Part shown: positions 51,567-59,451 of the stretch, piece after piece
Layout: each line of letters starts with the position of its first letter
Numbering within the stretch: position 1 is the stretch's first letter
Assembly: GCA_965644315.1 (NCBI GenBank)
Contig: CBFFRQ010000069.1
Location: 434,001-498,000, forward strand
Length of the DNA: 64,000 nt
DNA from: Caecitellus pseudoparvulus
Lineage: Eukaryota; Protista; Bigyra: Bicosoecida
Direction: 5' to 3'
Notes under the pieces: generated by a model
What the model was told of the DNA's origin: nothing
What the model saw: the letters and a program-made list of their open reading frames with translations, nothing else
Database searches by the model: none
Translations under genes and position numbers: made by a program

Positions 51567-54247
51567 TCAAATGTGGTCATGCAAGTCATCAAATTTTGTC
51601 GCTTGCTGTCGGACACTGTCAGCAATCCTACGATCACCACTTAAGACCAGAAGCTCCCGCACCACATTCACATGTCCATTCTGACACGCAAGGCGAAAGC
51701 CATACTCAGGTCTGCCCTCAGGGCCAGCATGTACGTCCACTGCTCGATCACCTGTCAGGGCCAGCAGCTCACGCACCACATCCACGTGGCCGTTCTCACA
51801 GGCGAGCCGGAAGCCAGACTCAGGTTTGCCTGCAGGACCAGCGTGCACATTCACCTCACGGTGCCCCTCCAGCGCCAGCAGCTCCCGCACAACGTCCACG
51901 TGGCCGTTCTCACAGGCGAGCCGGAAGCCAGACTCAGGTTTGCCTGCAGGACCAGCGTGCACATTCACCTCACGGTGCCCCTCCAGCGCCAGCAGCTCCC
52001 GCACAACGTCCACGTGGCCGTTCTCACAGGCGAGCCGGAAGCCAGACTCAGGTTTGCCTGCAGGACCAGCGTGCACATTCACCTCACGGTGCCCCTCCAG
52101 CGCCAGCAGCTCCCGCACAACGTCCACGTGGCCGTTCTCACAGGCGAGCTGGAAGCCAGACTCAGGTTTGCCTGCAGGACCAGCGTGCACATTCACCTCA
52201 CGGTGCCCCTCCAGCGCCAGCAGCTCCCGCACAACGTCCACGTGGCCGTTCTCACAGGCGAGCTGGAAGCCAGACTCAGGTTTGCCTGCAGGACCAGCGT
52301 GCACATTCACCTCACGGTGCCCCTCCAGCGCCAGCAGCTCCCGCACAACGTCCACGTGGCCGTTCTGACAAGCAAGGCGAAAGCCATACTCAGGCACACC
52401 ACTGAAACCAGCATGCACATCAATTTCGCGGGCACTTGTCAACGCCAGCAGCTCACGCACTACATCCAAGCGCCCATTCTGGCAGGCGATTTGGAACCCA
52501 AACTCACGATCGCCCTTGAAGCCTGCATGCACGTCTACCTCACGATGCCCGGTCAGCGACAGCAGCTCCCGCACCACATCAATGTGCCCATTCTGGCAAG
52601 CAAAGCGGAGGCCAGCCTCAGGCACACCACCAAAGCCTGTATGCACATCCACCTCACGATATCCGGTCAATTTCAGCAGCTCCCGCACCACGTCAATGTG
52701 CCCATTTTGGCAAGCGAGTCGGAAGCCAGCCTCTCCAACTCCACCAAAGCTTGCATGCACATTCACTTCACGAGCAACAGGTAGCGCTAGCAGCTCCCGC
52801 ACCACAGGCAGGTGCCCATTCGCACATGCAAGGCGGAAGGCAGCCTCAGGTTCGCCTCTAGCCCCAGCATGTACGTCTACCTTACGATGCCCGCTCAGCG
52901 CCAGCAAGTGATGTACCACATTAACGTGCCCATTCTGACAGGCAGCCCGGAAGCCAGCCTCGGGCACGCCGTCCACACCAGCATGCACATCCACGGCTCG
53001 ATCACCCGTCAGCGCCAGCAGCTCTCGCACCACGTCTAGATGACCATTCTGGCAGGCGATCCGGAAGCCATACTCAGGAAAGCCTGCACACCCAGCATGT
53101 ACATCCACAGCACGGTCACCCGCCAGCGCCAGCAGCTCTCGCACCACATCCACATGCCCATTCTGGCAGGCGATCCGGAAGCCATACTCAGGAAAGCCTG
53201 CACGCCCAGCATGTACATCCACAGCACGGTCACCCGCCAGCGCCAGCAACTCCCGCACCACATCAATGTGCCCGTTCTCACAGGCGAGCCAAAAGCCAAG
53301 CTCAGGACTGCCTGGAGCTCGTGCATGAACATCCACTGCTCTTGCACCCGTCAACGCTAGCAGCTCGCGAACCACATCAATGTGCCCGTTCTCACAGGCA
53401 AGCTGAAACCCAAATTCAGCAACACCACCAAAGCCTGCATGCACATCCACCTCACGTTCACCTGTCAGCGCCAGCAGCTCTCGCACTACATCCAGATGTC
53501 CATTCTGACAAGCGAGTCGGAAGCCTGCCTCAGGTACGCCCTTAGAGCTTGAATGGACGTCCACTTCACGATGCCCGCTCAGTGCCAGCAGCTCTCGCAC
53601 TACATCCACGTGCCCATTCTCACAAGCGAGCCGGAAGCCAGACTCAGGGTTGCCTTCTGGCCCAGCATGCACATTCACCTCACGATGCCCCTCAAGAGCC
53701 AAAAGTTCTTGCACCACACCCAAATGTCCATTCTGACAAGCAAGTCGGAAGCCAGCCTCAGGAACACCACCAATGCCTGTGTGAATATCTACCTCACGAT
53801 CGCCGGTCAACTTCAGCAGCTCGTGCACCACATCCGCATGCCCATACTGACAAGCAAGGCGAAAACCGAGCTCGGGATTACCTCGCGACCCCGCATGCAC
53901 ATTCACTTTCCGCGCTCCAGTGAGGGCCAGCAGCTCCCGCACCACATCCAAGTGCCCATTCTGACAAGCAAGGCGGAAGCCATACTCAGGGTTGCCCTCA
54001 GGCCCCACATGCAAATCCACCTTGCGATGCCCGCCCAGAGCCAGCAGCTCCCGCACCACATCCAAGTGTCCATTCGCACAGGCAGCTCGGAAGCCATACT
54101 CTGGGACACCCTTAAAGCCTGCATGCACATTCACCTCACGATGCCCCTCCAGCGCCAGCAGCTCACGCACCACTTCAATGTGCCCGTTCTGACAAGCGAG
54201 TCGGAAGCCAAACTCAGGGTTGCCTTCTGGCCCCACTTGCACATTCG
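51567..54247 (-). CDS. Ankyrin-repeat array, about 23 units of 38 aa; no ATG at its 5' edge, probably the 3' exon of the 57471-59451 gene
   Basis: Repeated GFRLACxNGHxDVVRELLALxGxRxVxVHAG; 114-bp period; the ORF begins mid-repeat at the edge of an inverted repeat. Confidence 0.9.
51782..52365. repeat. Five near-identical 114-bp ankyrin units
   Basis: CCACGTGGCCGTTCTCACAGGCGAGC...CCGCACAACGT repeats with 114-bp period and very few differences. Confidence 0.95.
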
Positions 54248-57200
54248 CTGTCTACCGTTAGGTTCAGGGGGTGTGGGGGAAGGGGGCCGCTCACGCAAGA
54301 AGTCCAACTAAGCCCCTAGAAGGCCCGTGGCAACGCAATCGCACCCACTACCTGCGTACATATGCAACATGGTAGTTGCACGTGTTTTGCAGAGCGTGCA
54401 GTGCATATTCCAGGTGCAGGGCGCACTAACCAGTCCGGAAATTGAAATTCCACGAGTTTTCAATCTCACGCACCAGGACACGCGCGCACCTTCCGAGGTG
54501 CCCCACACAAGGACCTACAAAGTGCACATACAATGCAATGGTGCGTGCAGGGCGGGGCGCGTGCGCTGCGTGGCAGGGCGTGCGCACACTTGTTTTCGGT
54601 GCCAAACTGTGCCCCTTCCACGCGCAAGTCCACAGGGCAGGGCTGTGGACCAACGGCATTGTAAATGCTATGCGCCTGGCCTATGGACACAATACTACAT
54701 GCTCAGCCTACTGCCTGCTGCGCAGCGGCCAGTTCTGTGCCGTTGGCCTGTGCAGGTTTTGCTGCATAGGCGTGTTGGCTGGGCGCTGTCCTCGGCAGGC
54801 CTGTGCCAGGCCACCTGAGCACCCTGGCGCACTGGCACAGTGTGTCAGGGCATTGGTACGGCATATGGCAGGGAAGTTTGCTCTGCTTGGCGCAGAATCG
54901 CTTGCCGTGGCTCAGGGAAGTGCCGCAGTGCTGAGCCTTGCGCTGGTCTGGTGCATGGCTGGCGTCTCGCACGGCAGCTCCGTGCTTGTGTAAGCAGGAG
55001 AGCTCCAATGGCTCGTGCCACAGAGCCATATGCAAGTCGGGTGCCTGCCCCAGTGCCAAGGCGAAGGGATTTGTGGTGCAGGGAGTGCTGACCGGTCCAG
55101 GGCGAGGCCTTGCTGGACAAGCAAGTGCTTGCTCGGCAGCGGGAGGCCGCCCAGCTGAGGCTACCTGCTGGGCCGCAGACACATCCAGTACATGTGCCTG
55201 GACTGTACTCATTGCAGAGCGTGCAGTTGTCCGAGTTGCCGCCGCCGGTCTCGCCGCGCGCGCGCTGCGCAAGCAGCAGCGCGCGGCGGCAGAGGCCGGC
55301 GGCAGTGCACTTGCTCCAGAACAGCAGCCCAGCCGTCGTAGAACATGCATTGTGGTTCATGCTGGGCCTAGGCATGTGCAGAGGGCGTGCATCGGCTGCT
55401 CATGCCTCCAGCAAGAGCACCAGGGTGCCCGTATCCGCAGCTGGCCGAAGCCAACGAAGTTGGAACGAGCCACACCAAAGCCATGTGCAGCAGGTACACA
55501 CAGCTGCCTCGCCACACTGCTGCACTGTGCCACACCTGTACCCTCCTGCGTGCGCGGGCGCCTGCTGGCACCGCCGTCCCCGATCTCCACCGACTCTCCG
55601 ACCCGGCCTTGCACCTCACACACACGGGCGTCGGTCTGAGCACTAATGCCGTTGGTGCAGCATGACACAGGGCTAAGCTGCTACACCCTGTGCACAGGTA
55701 CTGTTGCATGGGCCAGGCAGTGCACACGTGACAGAATGTCCGGGTGTGGGCCTGCCTACGGCGTGCTTGGCGCAGCGGCTCTCCGGGCCATGGCCGAGTC
55801 ATTGTGGGTGCCGTGCCCAGCATGATCGCTGTGGCGGTCCCAGGGCCCCATGCCTGCAGTTGGCAGCTTTCGTGCATGTCCGGTGTGCCATGTGGCGGTC
55901 GCAGCTGCTGAGGCCACTCGTGTAGGGCTTGGCGCTTGTGGCCGCACCACTCGCACTGGGTGTCGCGCCTTCCACTGCGCGCGACCACGGTAGTGCCGAG
56001 GCAGGCGCGCCTCAGGCAAGACGTGCACGATGCTTCAGCACATGGGAAGGGCAGTGCATGTCGTGCATGGGCCTGTGGTGGCTGAGGCACTGCGCGGAGG
56101 GCTGGTGTGGTGCTTGCTGTGGAAGGTTCCATTGATGTCCGCTGGCCTGGGCGGGCACATCAGCGATGTCCGTTGCCGCAGCGCCCAGTGCGGCACAGAG
56201 AGCGTGAATGCGAAGTCCCTGTGTGGAGCACTGGCAATGCATTGCAGATGGGCGTCCACAGGTCGCCTTGGCTGGAAGTCCATGTGGGGCAGGTTGGCCG
56301 GTCGGAGGCCCAAGGCCGCTGCCAGGGCACAGTGCAGGGCATGGGCCCAGCATGATCGCTGTGGCGGTCCCAGGGCCCCATGCCTGCAGTTGGCAGCTTT
56401 CGTGCATGTCCGGTGTGCCACGTGGCGGTCGCAGCTGCTGAGGCCACTCGTGTAGGGCTTGGCGCTTGTGGCCGCATCACTCGCACTGGGTGTCGCGCCT
56501 TCCACTGCGCGCGACCACGGTAGTGCCGAGGCAGGCGCGCCTCAGGCAAGACGTGCACGACGCTTCAGCACATGGGAAGGGCAGTGCATGTCGTGCATGG
56601 GCCTGTGGTGGCTGAGGCACTGCGCGGAGGGCTGGTGTGGTGCTTGCAGTGGAAGGTTCCATTGATGTCCGCTGGCCTGGACGGGCACATCAGCGATGTC
56701 CGTTGCCGCAGCGCCCAGTGCGGCACAGAGAGCGTGAATGCGAAGTCCCTGTGTGGAGCACTGGCAATGCATTGCAGATGGGCGTCCACAGGTCGCCTTG
56801 GCTGGAAGTCCATGTGGGGCAGGTTGGCCGGTCGGAGGCCCAAGGCCGCTGCCAGGGCACAGTGCAGGGCATGGGCCCAGCATGATCGCTGTGGCGGTCC
56901 CAGGGCCCCATGCCTGCAGTTGGCAGCTTTCGTGCATGTCCGGTGTGCCATGTGGCGGTCGCGGCTGCTGAGGCCACTCGTGTAGGGCTTGGCGCTTGTG
57001 GCCGCACCACTCGCACTGGGTGTCGCGCCTTCCACTGCGCGCGACCACGGTAGTGCCGAGGCAGGCGCGCCTCAGGCAAGACGTGCACGACGCTTCAGCA
57101 CATGGGAAGGGCAGTGCATGTCGTGCATGGGCCTGTGGTGGCTGAGGCACTGCGCGGAGGGCTGGTGTGGTGCTTGCTGTGGAAGGTTCCATTGATGTCC

Positions 57201-57419
57201 GCTGGCCTGGGCGGGCACATCAGCGATGTCCGTTGCCGCAGCGCCCAGTGCGGCACAGAGAGCGTGAATGCGAAGTCCCTGTGTGGAGCACTGGCAATGC
57301 ATTGCAGATGGGCGTCCACAGGTCGCCTTGGCTGGAAGTCCATGTGGGGCAGGTTGGCCGGCCGGAGGCCCAAGGCCACAGCCAGCGCACAGTGCAGGGC
57401 ATGGGGACGGTAGACAGCG
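54246..57419. mobile_element. Putative non-autonomous TIR element (3174 bp) inserted in the ankyrin gene
   Basis: Perfect 13-bp inverted repeats CGCTGTCTACCGT (54246-54258) and ACGGTAGACAGCG (57407-57419); no recognisable transposase; no clean target-site duplication. Confidence 0.65.
55815..57405. repeat. Tandem array of 3 x 530 bp, near-identical
   Basis: GCCCAGCATGATCGCTGTGGCGG starts at 55815, 56345 and 56875; the array ends 1 bp before the right inverted repeat. Confidence 0.97.
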
Positions 57420-57470
57420 TCTCGCATGCCGCAGGCATGGCCCGGAGGGCCAGAGTATTTTCCACCTCAC

Positions 57471-59451
57471 GATGCCCGCCTAGAGCCAGCAGCTCCCGCA
57501 CCACATCCAAGTGCCCATTCTGACAAGCAAGCCGGAAGCCAGACTCAGGGTTGCCTGCAGGCCCAGCGTGCACATCCACCTCACGATGCCCCTCAAGAGC
57601 CAAAAGTTCTTGCACCACACCCAAATGTCCATTCGCACAGGCAGCTCGGAAGCCGTACTCAGGCCTGCCTTCTGGCCCAGCATGTACATCCACCTCGTGA
57701 TGCCCAGAGAGAGCCAACAGCTTCCGCACTAATTCGACGTTCCCTGCTTTGCACGCCTTCTGGAAGGCAGCCGTCTTTTCTGGGTCAAACTTCGCTGCCT
57801 TGGCAGGCGGACGCTGTCCTGCACCTTGCTCTTCCTGCTCCAGTACACCTAACTGCCTCTCCTTCAACCACGTTCCAATGGCGCTTCCCACACGTTGCAG
57901 TCCTTCATCAGGCGCCCAAAAATCGTCACACGCCATTGCATATGCCCCCGTGCAGCACACCTCACCGCTTTCCATAGCCTCCAGCGCACGCAGCTCCTCC
58001 TGCCCGTCAACCCCACCACTGCACATGAACACCTGCTCCGTACCCCCACTTGCGCACCCCCCGACACCCAGCACACTCCGCACCACGCCTGACACACCCG
58101 CACTCCCACCTCCAACACCCGCACCCTCCCGCCCACCACTCCGCCACACAGCGCCACATGCACTCAACACCACCTCACACCCACCCCCATCCAGTGCCCC
58201 CACCAGATCACTCACACTCCCACTCCCCACATCTACCACCACAAAGCTCCCCACACCCACACCACTCAGCTTCACCCCACATGCCTCCGCCACAGCGCAA
58301 GCCCCCAACACCCGCACGGCCACGCGCTGCTTCGCTTCCAGCCCAACATCGCCCCATGCTTCATCGTCCACGAACGTGCCCAACGGCCACCCTTTCTCGC
58401 ACTGCAACTGCACTGCAATCGTGCTTTGCTCCCCGACTGGTTCATCAGCTCCAACGTCGATGCAAGCATGCTTCACCGCCACTCGGCGCGGTTGCTGCGC
58501 CATCCGAGGCAGCCCCAGTTTGACTCGTATGCCTTCAGCGCGTTTCAGGCTCGCCACGCTCCCGCTCAACACACCCGCACCAACACTCAGCACCGACGCC
58601 CACTCCTCAACGTCCACGGTGGTTGTGTCAGGTTTTGGGGCGATGTGACTCTCAACCATGCACACGCTTGCTTCCGCGCTGTTCTTGAACACAACACTCT
58701 CTGGAGCATCAGTACCAGACACTGGCACCAACTTCCGACCAGCGATCCCGACACCACACCCCAGCAGCCCGCGCAGCCCTTCCACCGCACTCGCAGCACT
58801 CTCCAAGTGCTTCGCAGCACTCTCACTCGTCAGATCGCCTGCCGCCTCGCCTCGCAGCCAACCAGCCTGCTGCCGCATGCCAGCCAGGGCCGCATCCATC
58901 GCAGCCTCGCCACCGGCATCATGTGTGACAGGGCCACCCGCACCAGCCACATCCACCCCCCCCTCCTCAAAACCTTGCCACCATCGCGTCAGATCAGCCA
59001 GCGCACCCTCCACGTTCACACCGCTCCGCACACTGCCCCAAGCACCCACAATGGCGCCCCACAGTGCGTCACCCTCCGGCACTGCATCAACACTCACACC
59101 AGATACCGCCTGATGCAGCACATCCACCGCGCAGAAGCACCGGAACGACAAGTACTGCAGCGCAGCACACACGCCACCTCGCTCATGCTGCCCCGCCAAC
59201 AGCCCAGCTTGCTCCAACAGCGCACTCCCTGCATCACGCAGTGCAGCCTCCAGCTCCACCAGGCTCATGGCCGATGGGGCATCATCGCCTGCATCAGTCG
59301 GCTCGCCACGCAAAATGGCTGCCAGTCCTCTCAGTGCTGGGCCGTGGTCCATGACGCTGCCTGGCAAGCACTTCATCTTGCCCAAGCATGCCGCCACCAC
59401 CCCAGCATTGAAGTCCTTGATGTCGGGGCTACCTCCTCCGGGCCCTTCCAT
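57471..59451 (-). CDS. N-terminal part of the ankyrin protein: uncharacterised helical/Gly-Val-rich region plus 3 ankyrin units
   Basis: ATG at 59451; ends with the same 38-aa repeats; repeat similarity stops at REV (about 57462) and the unspliced ORF runs on into the 530-bp array to 57220. Confidence 0.75.

What the first reader, a model, noticed from the sequence alone, without database searches (positions are those of the whole stretch)
54246..57470. 3.2-kb TIR-bounded insert that may splice out of an ankyrin gene (giant introner-like element)
Seen: the ankyrin repeats stop at ...GGHREV (~57462) and resume at NVQVGPEGNPE (54245), the same register in the 38-aa unit, so the two ORFs look like one interrupted gene. 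The intervening DNA is bounded by perfect 13-bp inverted repeats (54246-54258 and 57407-57419). On the coding (-) strand the element ends in ...AAC CTAAC GGTAGACAG|CG, a canonical branch point followed by CAG, with the acceptor inside the TIR. A host-derived donor C|GTGAGG sits at 57470, the same donor hexamer as the RPN5 intron at 288. Splicing 57470 to 54248 (3223 nt) gives CAT CCG AAT GTG, in frame, and a 1553-aa protein with about 26 repeats (REV becomes P). Known: introners of Micromonas and Aureococcus are short non-autonomous DNA transposons that carry one splice site and co-opt the other from the host. Inference: this is a much larger, repeat-laden version in a genome whose other introns are ~60-130 nt. 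Caveats: no clean TSD, and about 42 unexplained bases (57420-57461) lie outside the right TIR.
Basis: partly seen in the sequence, partly recalled or inferred. Interest (0 to 1): 0.85.

Follow-up and report, generated by a model that had tools for sequence, protein, structure and literature searches.

The report
Site-specific rolling-circle transposon in ankyrin gene
The 3.2-kb insert is a non-coding Helitron2-type (rolling-circle) transposon that, like all its copies, sits at one exact codon position of a large ankyrin-repeat gene family; whether the cell splices it out as an intron is still untested.

Summary
A 38-aa ankyrin-repeat gene on the minus strand is interrupted in register by 3,217 nt carrying a perfect 13-nt inverted repeat. 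The interpretation needs changing. Read on the plus strand (54245-57461), the insert starts 5'-TC plus the repeat arm. The second arm lies 42 nt inside the 3' end. Two mini-hairpins with 3-nt loops follow, and the element ends in ATTTT. There is no target-site duplication, there is a central 3 x 530-nt tandem array, and elsewhere copies are joined precisely head to tail.

The genome holds 7 copies at 5 loci. Element ends are 88-100% identical; flanks are only 60-80%. All copies sit at the same point of the E-V-D-V codons (GGTGG^ATGTG). A 2.2-kb sister family (5 copies) with a homologous 3' end always sits at GTGGT^GCG, another point of the same repeat. No matching Rep/helicase gene was found.

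Splicing is unproven. The only RNA-like data (seawater metatranscriptome contigs) show element sequence with a 73-nt internal intron removed, not the proposed junction. I rate this a new variant of a known kind, of moderate interest for its strict target specificity.

The parts
54245..57461 (+). Whole mobile element (3,217 nt), family 1, read in its own orientation: 5'-TCGCTG...GTATTTT-3'. It lies antisense to the ankyrin gene.
   Evidence: Conserved end to end in 7 genomic copies. Boundaries are fixed by the precise head-to-tail junction AGTATTTT|TCGCTGTC on C151 and checked.
54246..54258 (+). 5'-terminal arm of the asymmetric inverted repeat (CGCTGTCTACCGT), preceded by T at 54245.
   Evidence: pair I19 (100% complementary). 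Older copies carry CGCTATCTACCAT paired with ATGGTAGATAGC(T/G), so both arms changed together.
57407..57419 (+). Subterminal 3' arm of the inverted repeat (ACGGTAGACAGCG), 42 nt inside the 3' end.
57426..57451 (+). Two adjacent mini-hairpins with 3-nt loops: ATGCC-gca-GGCAT and GGCCC-gga-GGGCC.
   Evidence: The pattern search finds 12 copies in the genome and 0 in the control, all of them in family 1 or family 2. DNA folding has z = -2.96.
57452..57461 (+). 3' terminal tail AGAGTATTTT.
   Evidence: Family 2 ends GTTGGATTTT. FoHeli1/2 and Chaetomium Helitron2 elements also end in ATTTT (PMC5148889).
55815..57404 (+). Central tandem array of 3 x 530 nt. Other copies have 1 or 2 units.
   Evidence: (family D1). 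The unit occurs only inside family-1 copies (13 units in the genome).
54543..55389 (-). About 850-nt core shared at 75% with family 2 and at 70% with a copy on C50. It is non-coding.
   Evidence: Substitutions show no codon periodicity. No Rfam match.
54515..54587 (-). 73-nt GT..AG interval missing from seawater metatranscriptome contigs: an internal small intron on the gene-sense strand.
   Evidence: joint 54512->54586 (cut +2), seen in runs X1 and X2. The ends were checked.
57462..59451 (-). Upstream part of the host gene: an N-terminal domain plus about 2.7 ankyrin units, ending ...HREV and the G of the next codon. Read through without splicing, the ORF runs about 80 codons into the element and stops at 57220.
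51567..54244 (-). Downstream part of the host gene: about 23 ankyrin units and a C-terminal tail, open throughout.
57465..57470 (-).
   Evidence: The same hexamer is present at C209 but absent at C68, C151 and C23.
54246..54262 (-). Candidate branch point and acceptors inside the element's terminus: CTAAC GGTAG|ACAG|CG.
   Evidence: These are sequence candidates only; no RNA support.

Best explanation
The insert is a non-autonomous rolling-circle transposon of the Helitron2/Helentron-derived (HINE-like) kind, lying antisense in the ankyrin gene.

Inferred mechanism:
- A Rep/helicase supplied in trans nicks at the 5'-TC end.
- It peels off one strand up to the 3' signal (subterminal repeat arm, two hairpins, ATTTT).
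- It pastes the strand into a target without duplicating it.
- Joined ends or read-through give head-to-tail copies.

Shown here: target choice is sequence-specific.
- Every family-1 copy sits at GGTGG^ATGTG, the conserved E-V-D-V codons of the 38-aa repeat.
- Every copy of a sister family sits at GTGGT^GCG (V-V^R-E-L).
- The family therefore lives in a multi-copy gene family. The 14-mer spanning the empty site occurs 292 times in the genome.

In this window the element splits the gene. Without splicing, the product would be the N-terminal domain plus fewer than 3 repeats and an 80-residue tail read from the element. Most likely this copy simply disrupts the gene, but removal by the spliceosome is not excluded.
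For: Architecture:
- 5'-TC start plus a terminal repeat arm; the second arm lies 42 nt inside the 3' end; then two hairpins; then ATTTT.
- This matches the published description of Helitron2 elements: asymmetric terminal inverted repeats with the 3' arm 20-50 nt inside the end, hairpins, a TC... start, an ATTTT end, no target-site duplication, and circles with joined ends (PMC5148889).
- It also matches HINEs, which have subterminal repeats, a 3' stem-loop and central tandem repeats making up to half of the element (PMC4067079).
- No duplication at any of 10 loci.
- A precise head-to-tail junction on C151.
- 1-3 internal 530-nt units per copy.
- Both repeat arms changed together in the older copies.
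- Family 2 has a homologous 3' end and its own 5'/subterminal repeat.

Mobility and specificity:
- 7 copies at 5 loci.
- Element ends are 88-100% identical while 228-nt flanks are 60-80% identical, and the bases right at the junctions differ between loci.
- The host genes at C68 and C151 have N-terminal regions unrelated to the window's gene.
- The empty-site 14-mer occurs 292 times, against 0 in the control.

Non-coding:
- No codon periodicity and no Rfam family.
Against: - No Rep/helicase with matching termini is in the assembly. The single Helitron_like_N gene (C180) has different ends that look Helitron1-like.
- Strict sequence-specific insertion is not a described Helitron property. The published preferences are short (A^T, TT, TNAT^T).
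- The basis of the specificity is unknown. I found no guide-like complementarity between targets and termini beyond a control.
- On disruption versus splicing: flanking ORFs are open on both sides at all five loci, including the oldest copy. This is expected if the elements are spliced, but also if the insertions are young or the flanks are refreshed by gene conversion.
Confidence: 0.7

Rival explanations
1. It is the same Helitron-type element, but it functions as an introner. The spliceosome removes it (or nearly all of it), so the gene still makes a full-length protein of about 1,550 residues. Two routes are possible:
- a pair available at more loci, GAG|GTGGAA (the Val codon next to the element) to GGTAG|ACAGCG.
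For: - Both pairs are in frame.
- CTAAC plus YAG lie in the element's terminus on the gene-sense strand.
- ORFs are open on both sides at all 5 loci.
- At the oldest copy (C23) the junction reads GAG|GTAAAT, a near-consensus donor. TAG|ATA GCT AAA CAT then restores both the frame and the 38-aa unit length, whereas precise excision would not restore the frame.
- A 177-nt metatranscriptome contig matches 54112-54243 perfectly and then leaves the genome sequence at the element boundary (record 1).
- Helitron-derived introners are already documented (PMC12130899).
Against: - No junction read was seen. Neither proposed joint is among the joints listed, though 5 joints were not shown.
- Record 1 stops at 54243, whereas either splice model predicts a match through at least 54247.
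- A 3.2-kb intron, or 5 kb at the tandem loci, is far outside the 60-130-nt range seen in this genome.
- Contigs from libraries labelled metatranscriptomic carry internal element sequence with its own 73-nt intron removed. At least some transcripts therefore keep element sequence.
- With several GT/AG candidates available, one in-frame pair is expected by chance.
Confidence: 0.25
2. It is a circular element integrated by a site-specific (tyrosine or serine) recombinase, Crypton-like, recombining an element site with the conserved ankyrin sequence.
For: - Strict site specificity, no duplication, and head-to-tail tandem copies of non-identical elements all fit integration of a circle.
- The junction is ambiguous by 1-2 nt (a shared A/GA), which could be a minimal crossover core.
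Against: - The shared core is only 1-2 nt.
- The terminal architecture (asymmetric repeat, 3' hairpins, TC...ATTTT) matches Helitron2 point by point.
- I did not search for a recombinase gene.
Confidence: 0.06
3. It is an ancestral long intron of the repeat unit, inherited through repeat and gene duplication and kept similar by gene conversion, rather than a mobile element.
For: - It occupies the same register in every gene.
- The window gene and the C23 gene are close paralogues in both the N-terminal domain and the C-terminal tail.
Against: - Elements are 99-100% identical between genes with unrelated N-terminal regions, while flanks are 60-72% identical and differ right at the junction.
- The unit that recurs, including in tandem junctions, is TC...ATTTT and not a GT...AG interval.
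- Only about 5 of several hundred equivalent sites are occupied.
Confidence: 0.03
4. It is an assembly artefact that joins two separate paralogues through a repeat.
For: - The region is repeat-rich, with a 3 x 530-nt array and 114-nt units.
- C151 and C209 are short contigs.
Against: - The same element with the same junction sequences is assembled at five loci with different flanks.
- The register of the repeat is exactly preserved across the insert.
Confidence: 0.01

Closest known systems
Helitron2-type elements of fungi and green algae (FoHeli1/2 of Fusarium oxysporum, Chaetomium; Helitron2 of Chlamydomonas) - PMC5148889
   Same: - Asymmetric terminal inverted repeat of 12-13 nt, with the 3' arm tens of nt inside the end.
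- Hairpins whose loops are of the GAA type.
- 5'-TC start and ATTTT-3' end.
- No target-site duplication.
- Joined ends.
- The internal part can be inverted relative to the termini, as between family 1 and family 2 here.
   Different: - No Rep/helicase partner was found here.
- The published target preference is a few bases (TNAT^T). Here one exact position in a coding repeat is used by all copies.
HINEs / DINE-1 (non-autonomous Helentrons) - PMC4067079
   Same: - Non-coding.
- Subterminal inverted repeats.
- A 3' stem-loop.
- Central tandem repeats that vary in number.
- T-run termini.
   Different: - HINEs insert in TT dinucleotides genome-wide and reach very high copy numbers.
- Here there are 7 + 5 copies, all in one gene family.
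   Same: - Near-identical non-autonomous transposon copies inside coding sequence.
- Candidate splice signals at an element end, with possible use of a host GT.
   Different: - Splicing is not shown here.
- There are no symmetric terminal repeats and no duplication, unlike the Micromonas/Aureococcus type (from my own knowledge of Huff et al. 2016; not re-read here).
- Copies are confined to one codon position of one family instead of being spread over many genes.
- The element is 2.2-3.2 kb, in a genome whose introns are about 60-130 nt.
Target-specific transposons of multi-copy genes (R1/R2 in rDNA, Pokey, Dada) - PMC3706591, PMC3849761
   Same: Works alike: insertion at one exact sequence of a multi-copy target. 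This spares single-copy genes and leaves many spare sites.
   Different: - Those elements are non-LTR, piggyBac or Dada elements that target RNA genes.
- Here a Helitron-like element targets codons of a protein repeat.

Membership tests
Helitron2 / Helentron-derived non-autonomous element | Asymmetric terminal inverted repeat: a 5'-terminal arm and a 3' arm 20-50 nt inside the 3' end | tested here: met
   Arms at 54246-54258 and 57407-57419, the latter 42 nt from the end. Family 2 has TCCTAATCCCCGTCC paired with GGACGGGGAGTAGA.
Helitron2 / Helentron-derived non-autonomous element | Hairpin(s) near the 3' end | tested here: met
   Two mini-hairpins at 57426-57451. The pattern is found 12 times in the genome and 0 times in the control.
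Helitron2 / Helentron-derived non-autonomous element | No target-site duplication | tested here: met
   10 of 10 loci.
Helitron2 / Helentron-derived non-autonomous element | Conserved terminal bases (5'-TC..., ...ATTTT-3' in FoHeli1/2 and Chaetomium) | tested here: met
   TCGCTG...GTATTTT in family 1 and TCCTAA...GGATTTT in family 2.
Helitron2 / Helentron-derived non-autonomous element | Rep/helicase-encoding partner sharing the termini | tested here: not met
   There is only one PF14214 hit in the assembly (C180). Its termini do not match, it has 52% GC, and it has a Helitron1-like CTAG|T end. The 215-contig assembly may be incomplete.
Helitron2 / Helentron-derived non-autonomous element | Signs of rolling-circle replication (joined ends or head-to-tail multimers) | tested here: met
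   Precise junction AGTATTTT|TCGCTGTC on C151, and a second tandem pair on C209. Circles themselves cannot be tested in silico.
Helitron2 / Helentron-derived non-autonomous element | Insertion at TT or T-rich dinucleotides | tested here: inconclusive
   Insertion always follows a T (CACAT^C; GTGGT^G) but not TT. The specificity is far longer than a dinucleotide.
Introner | Removed from mRNA by the spliceosome at defined GT..AG sites | not testable with these tools
   No RNA run of the organism was available. The metatranscriptome contigs gave no junction among the listed joints.
Introner | Element carries or co-opts splice sites in the same way at all copies | tested here: not met
The alternative GAG|GTGGAA is weak. 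The acceptor lies in the element at all loci.
Introner | Many near-identical copies in unrelated genes | tested here: not met
   7 copies, all in 38-aa ankyrin-repeat genes and all at one position.
Cut-and-paste DNA transposon with terminal inverted repeats (Micromonas/Aureococcus introner type) | Terminal inverted repeats at both ends plus a target-site duplication | tested here: not met
   One arm is 42 nt internal, and there is no duplication.

The most novel reading that the evidence does not exclude
Helitron2-like elements in this marine protist pick their targets by a long, family-specific sequence. Two sister families hit two different exact positions of the same ankyrin repeat, which implies a retargetable recognition system. 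They are tolerated because the spliceosome removes them. If so, they are site-specific introners that create new introns at fixed codon positions of a candidate immune-receptor gene family.
Probability: 0.15. Interest if true: 0.8.

Novelty: new variant of a known kind. Interest (0 to 1): 0.55.

Why it matters
- Helitron-type elements are known for loose target choice. A pair of families that each use one exact position in a protein-coding repeat would be a new case of target-specific DNA transposition.
- Until now such specificity has been documented mainly for elements that live in rRNA, tRNA and snRNA genes.
- It raises a testable question: how does a rolling-circle transposase, or something the element encodes, read a target of about 10 nt or more?
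- It also bears on the evolution of the roughly 80-member hypervariable ankyrin family of this protist. About one gene in eight carries such an insert.
- If the inserts are spliced, this would be a natural case of intron gain at a predetermined codon.
- If they are not, it is a transposon that uses a dispensable gene family as a safe harbour and truncates the receptors.

Tried and rejected
- **RNA evidence.** The look-up of sequencing runs returned only two seawater runs labelled metatranscriptomic, holding 5-11% of the words. Read laying on 53000-58900 gave short contigs, mostly from paralogues. The long 54xxx->57xxx joints have 20-27-nt sides and are out of register, so I treat them as repeat artefacts.
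- **Protein models.** A search with the downstream exon alone found nothing above 62% identity, so there is no annotated or transcript-derived model of this gene. An exact look-up of the upstream ORF product found nothing.
- **JGI metagenome scan** with the double-hairpin pattern: 110 hits, none genuine. My pattern was too loose.
- **Coding or RNA function of the conserved core.** No codon periodicity and no Rfam match.
- **Autonomous partner.** The only Rep/helicase (C180) does not share the termini.
- **Guide-like pairing** between target and element ends, as in IS200/IS605: nothing beyond the cross-family control.
- **Reverse splicing of a mobile spliceosomal intron.** Rejected, because the recurring unit is TC...ATTTT and not GT...AG.
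- **Environmental contig L041**, collinear with C50. I hoped it would give an empty site for the third relative, but it diverges without returning.

Full report
**1. Observation**

The minus strand carries an ORF (59451..57220) with an N-terminal domain followed by 38-aa ankyrin-like units that end ...LGGHREV. A second ORF (54242..51567) continues with NVQVGPEGNPE and about 23 further units. The 114-nt periodicity stops at 54244 and resumes at 57461.

A perfect 13-nt inverted repeat lies at 54246-54258 / 57407-57419 (I19). An array of 3 x 530 nt fills 55815-57404 (D1).

**2.

- A search of the window's own 30.6-Mb assembly finds 7 copies at 5 loci: C69 (this window), C68, C23, and pairs on C151 and C209. 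They are 90-100% identical and carry 1, 2 or 3 of the 530-nt units.
- On C151 two copies abut with no host base between them. On the window's plus strand this junction reads AGTATTTT|TCGCTGTC.
- That fixes the unit as 5'-TCGCTGTCTACCGT ... ACGGTAGACAGCG TCTCGC ATGCCgcaGGCAT GGCCCggaGGGCC AGAGTATTTT-3', which is window 54245-57461.
- Removing it leaves GAG GTG GAT GTG CA, the canonical E-V-D-V-H of the repeat. There is no duplication.

**3. What kind of element**

The published description of Helitron2 elements lists the following (PMC5148889):
- asymmetric terminal inverted repeats, with the 3' arm tens of nt inside the end;
- hairpins, in Fusarium with GAA loops;
- starts such as TCAG and ends in ATTTT;
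- no target-site duplication;
- circles with joined ends;
- internal parts that can be inverted relative to the termini.

Non-autonomous Helentron derivatives (HINEs, DINE-1) add subterminal repeats, a 3' stem-loop and central tandem repeats of variable number (PMC4067079).

Every one of these structural points is met here. Supporting detail:
- Older copies carry CGCTATCTACCAT paired with ATGGTAGATAGC(T/G), so both arms changed together.
- The double-hairpin pattern occurs 12 times in the genome and never in the reversed control.
- The conserved 850-nt core has no codon periodicity, and the element has no Rfam match, so it is non-coding.

What is missing is the partner. The only Helitron_like_N gene (C180:14585-20860, a 2,092-codon ORF) has 52% GC and unrelated ends that look like a classical Helitron (hairpin, then CTAG|T). 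It sits beside an AT-rich block.

**4. Target specificity**

- All five family-1 loci have the element at the same nucleotide of the repeat, antisense to the gene.
- Flanks of 228 nt are 60-80% identical between loci, while the element ends are 88-100% identical.
- The bases next to the junction differ between loci: catcgtgaggtg, caccgagaggtg, gcgcgggcagtg.
- The C68 and C151 host genes have N-terminal regions unrelated to the window's gene.
- At least the three youngest copies (C69, C68, C151a; 99-100% identical) are therefore independent insertions. They are not inherited copies and not gene-conversion tracts.
- The 14-mer across the empty site occurs 292 times in the genome, against 0 in the control. 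The target is multi-copy and mostly empty.

A second family shows the same behaviour at a different site.
- It is 2.2 kb long, with 5 copies on C56, C68, C157, C175 and C202.
- Its 3' end has the same design: ...GGACGGGGAGTAGA CCTCCC ATGCCgaaGGCAT A GGCCgaaGGCC GTTGGATTTT. Its 5' end is TCCTAATCCCCGTCC.
- It always lies in sense orientation at GTGGT^GCG (V-V^R-E-L-L), with different flanks at each locus.
- It shares the core at 75% identity, but inverted relative to the termini.

A more distant relative lies outside ankyrin genes, downstream of a DHFR-TS gene on C50.

I found no guide-like complementarity between the targets and the element ends beyond a cross-family control. The basis of the specificity is open.

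**5. Is it spliced?**

This could not be tested directly. No RNA run of the organism is available. Two seawater libraries labelled metatranscriptomic hold related contigs. They show three things:
- A 177-nt contig is identical to 54112-54243 and has a further 45 nt that were not placed. It seems to leave the genome sequence at the element boundary, but it stops 4 nt (or 9 nt) short of what the two splice models predict.
- Contigs cover 54409-55037 and 57320-57452 of the element at 90-97% identity.
- In both runs a contig lacks exactly 54515-54587, a 73-nt GT..AG interval on the gene-sense strand. This argues that the contigs are RNA, and that transcripts containing element sequence are processed internally.

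Neither proposed long junction is among the 15 joints listed; 5 were not shown.

Comparative points for and against splicing:
- The donor available at most loci, GAG|GTGGAA, is weak.
- With several GT and AG candidates, one in-frame pair is expected by chance.
- In favour: ORFs are open on both sides at all loci.
- In favour: the oldest copy (C23) has GAG|GTAAAT at the junction, and TAG|ATA GCT AAA CAT restores both the frame and the unit length, while precise excision would not.

I put splicing to a functional mRNA at about one in four.

**6. Context**

- Thymidylate synthase from C50 is closest to stramenopiles among named organisms (Cafeteria 75%, oomycetes 72-74%). A 99% identical environmental protein also exists. 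The host is therefore a marine stramenopile-like protist.
- Earlier notes of this scan describe about 80 genes with hypervariable 38-aa ankyrin repeats in this genome. I did not re-test that count.
- Helitron-derived introners have been published, as about 1% of classified introner families (PMC12130899). Even the introner reading would therefore be a new member of a known kind.
- Strict target specificity of DNA transposons is documented for Pokey and Dada in RNA genes (PMC3849761, PMC3706591). My literature searches found no report of a Helitron-type element confined to one codon position of a protein repeat. The library is incomplete, so this is not proof of absence.

**7. Verdict**

- Best reading: a site-specific, non-autonomous Helitron2/HINE-like element that probably truncates this ankyrin gene.
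- It is a new variant of a known kind, of moderate interest because of the target specificity.

Noticed in passing
G000:C68:668942-671150, C157, C175, C56, C202 (loci L008-L011, L030, L031, L036-L038): A second element family (about 2.2 kb, 5 copies) has the same 3'-end design. It is always inserted in sense orientation at GTGGT^GCG (V-V^R-E-L-L) of the 38-aa repeat. The C56 copy is truncated at its 5' side.
   Followed up: partly
window 54515-54587 (minus strand): A 73-nt GT..AG interval inside the element is absent from contigs of two seawater runs labelled metatranscriptomic. Element sequence therefore seems to be transcribed on the gene-sense strand and spliced internally.
   Followed up: partly
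G000:C180:6000-25999 (L027, L028): The only Rep/helicase gene of the assembly (a 2,092-codon ORF with Helitron_like_N and DUF6570, 52% GC) lies between an 8-kb block of 19-32% GC and host DNA of 70% GC. Its end looks like a classical Helitron (11-nt-stem hairpin, then CTAG|T). This may be a foreign island.
   Followed up: partly
G000:C50:158533 onward (L012, L042) versus environmental contig L041: A distant relative of the element core lies downstream of a DHFR-TS gene. A 96% identical ENA seawater contig is collinear up to C50:158532 and then differs for more than 9 kb. This could be a large insertion, a rearrangement or a chimeric scaffold. Two 5'-end-like sequences face each other there.
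   Followed up: partly
G000:C23:45211-50326 (L007) versus window 57462-59451 and 51567-51700: The host gene of the oldest copy is a close paralogue of the window's gene. It has the same N-terminal domain (about 85% identical, by eye) and the same C-terminal tail (...KFDDL.H.I*), but 4 + 2 repeats instead of about 3 + 23.
   Followed up: no
G000:C151 and C209 (L003-L006): The head-to-tail pairs consist of non-identical copies (94% versus 99% identity to the window copy). C151b combines a young-type 5' arm with an old-type 3' arm. This suggests successive insertions at an occupied site, or recombination, rather than one read-through event.
   Followed up: no
G000:C209:5770-5790 (L004): The old-type 5' terminus reads TCGCTGT-TAGCTAT-CTACCAT. 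The young type, TCGCTGT-CTACCGT, looks derived from it by a 7-nt deletion between short direct repeats.
   Followed up: no
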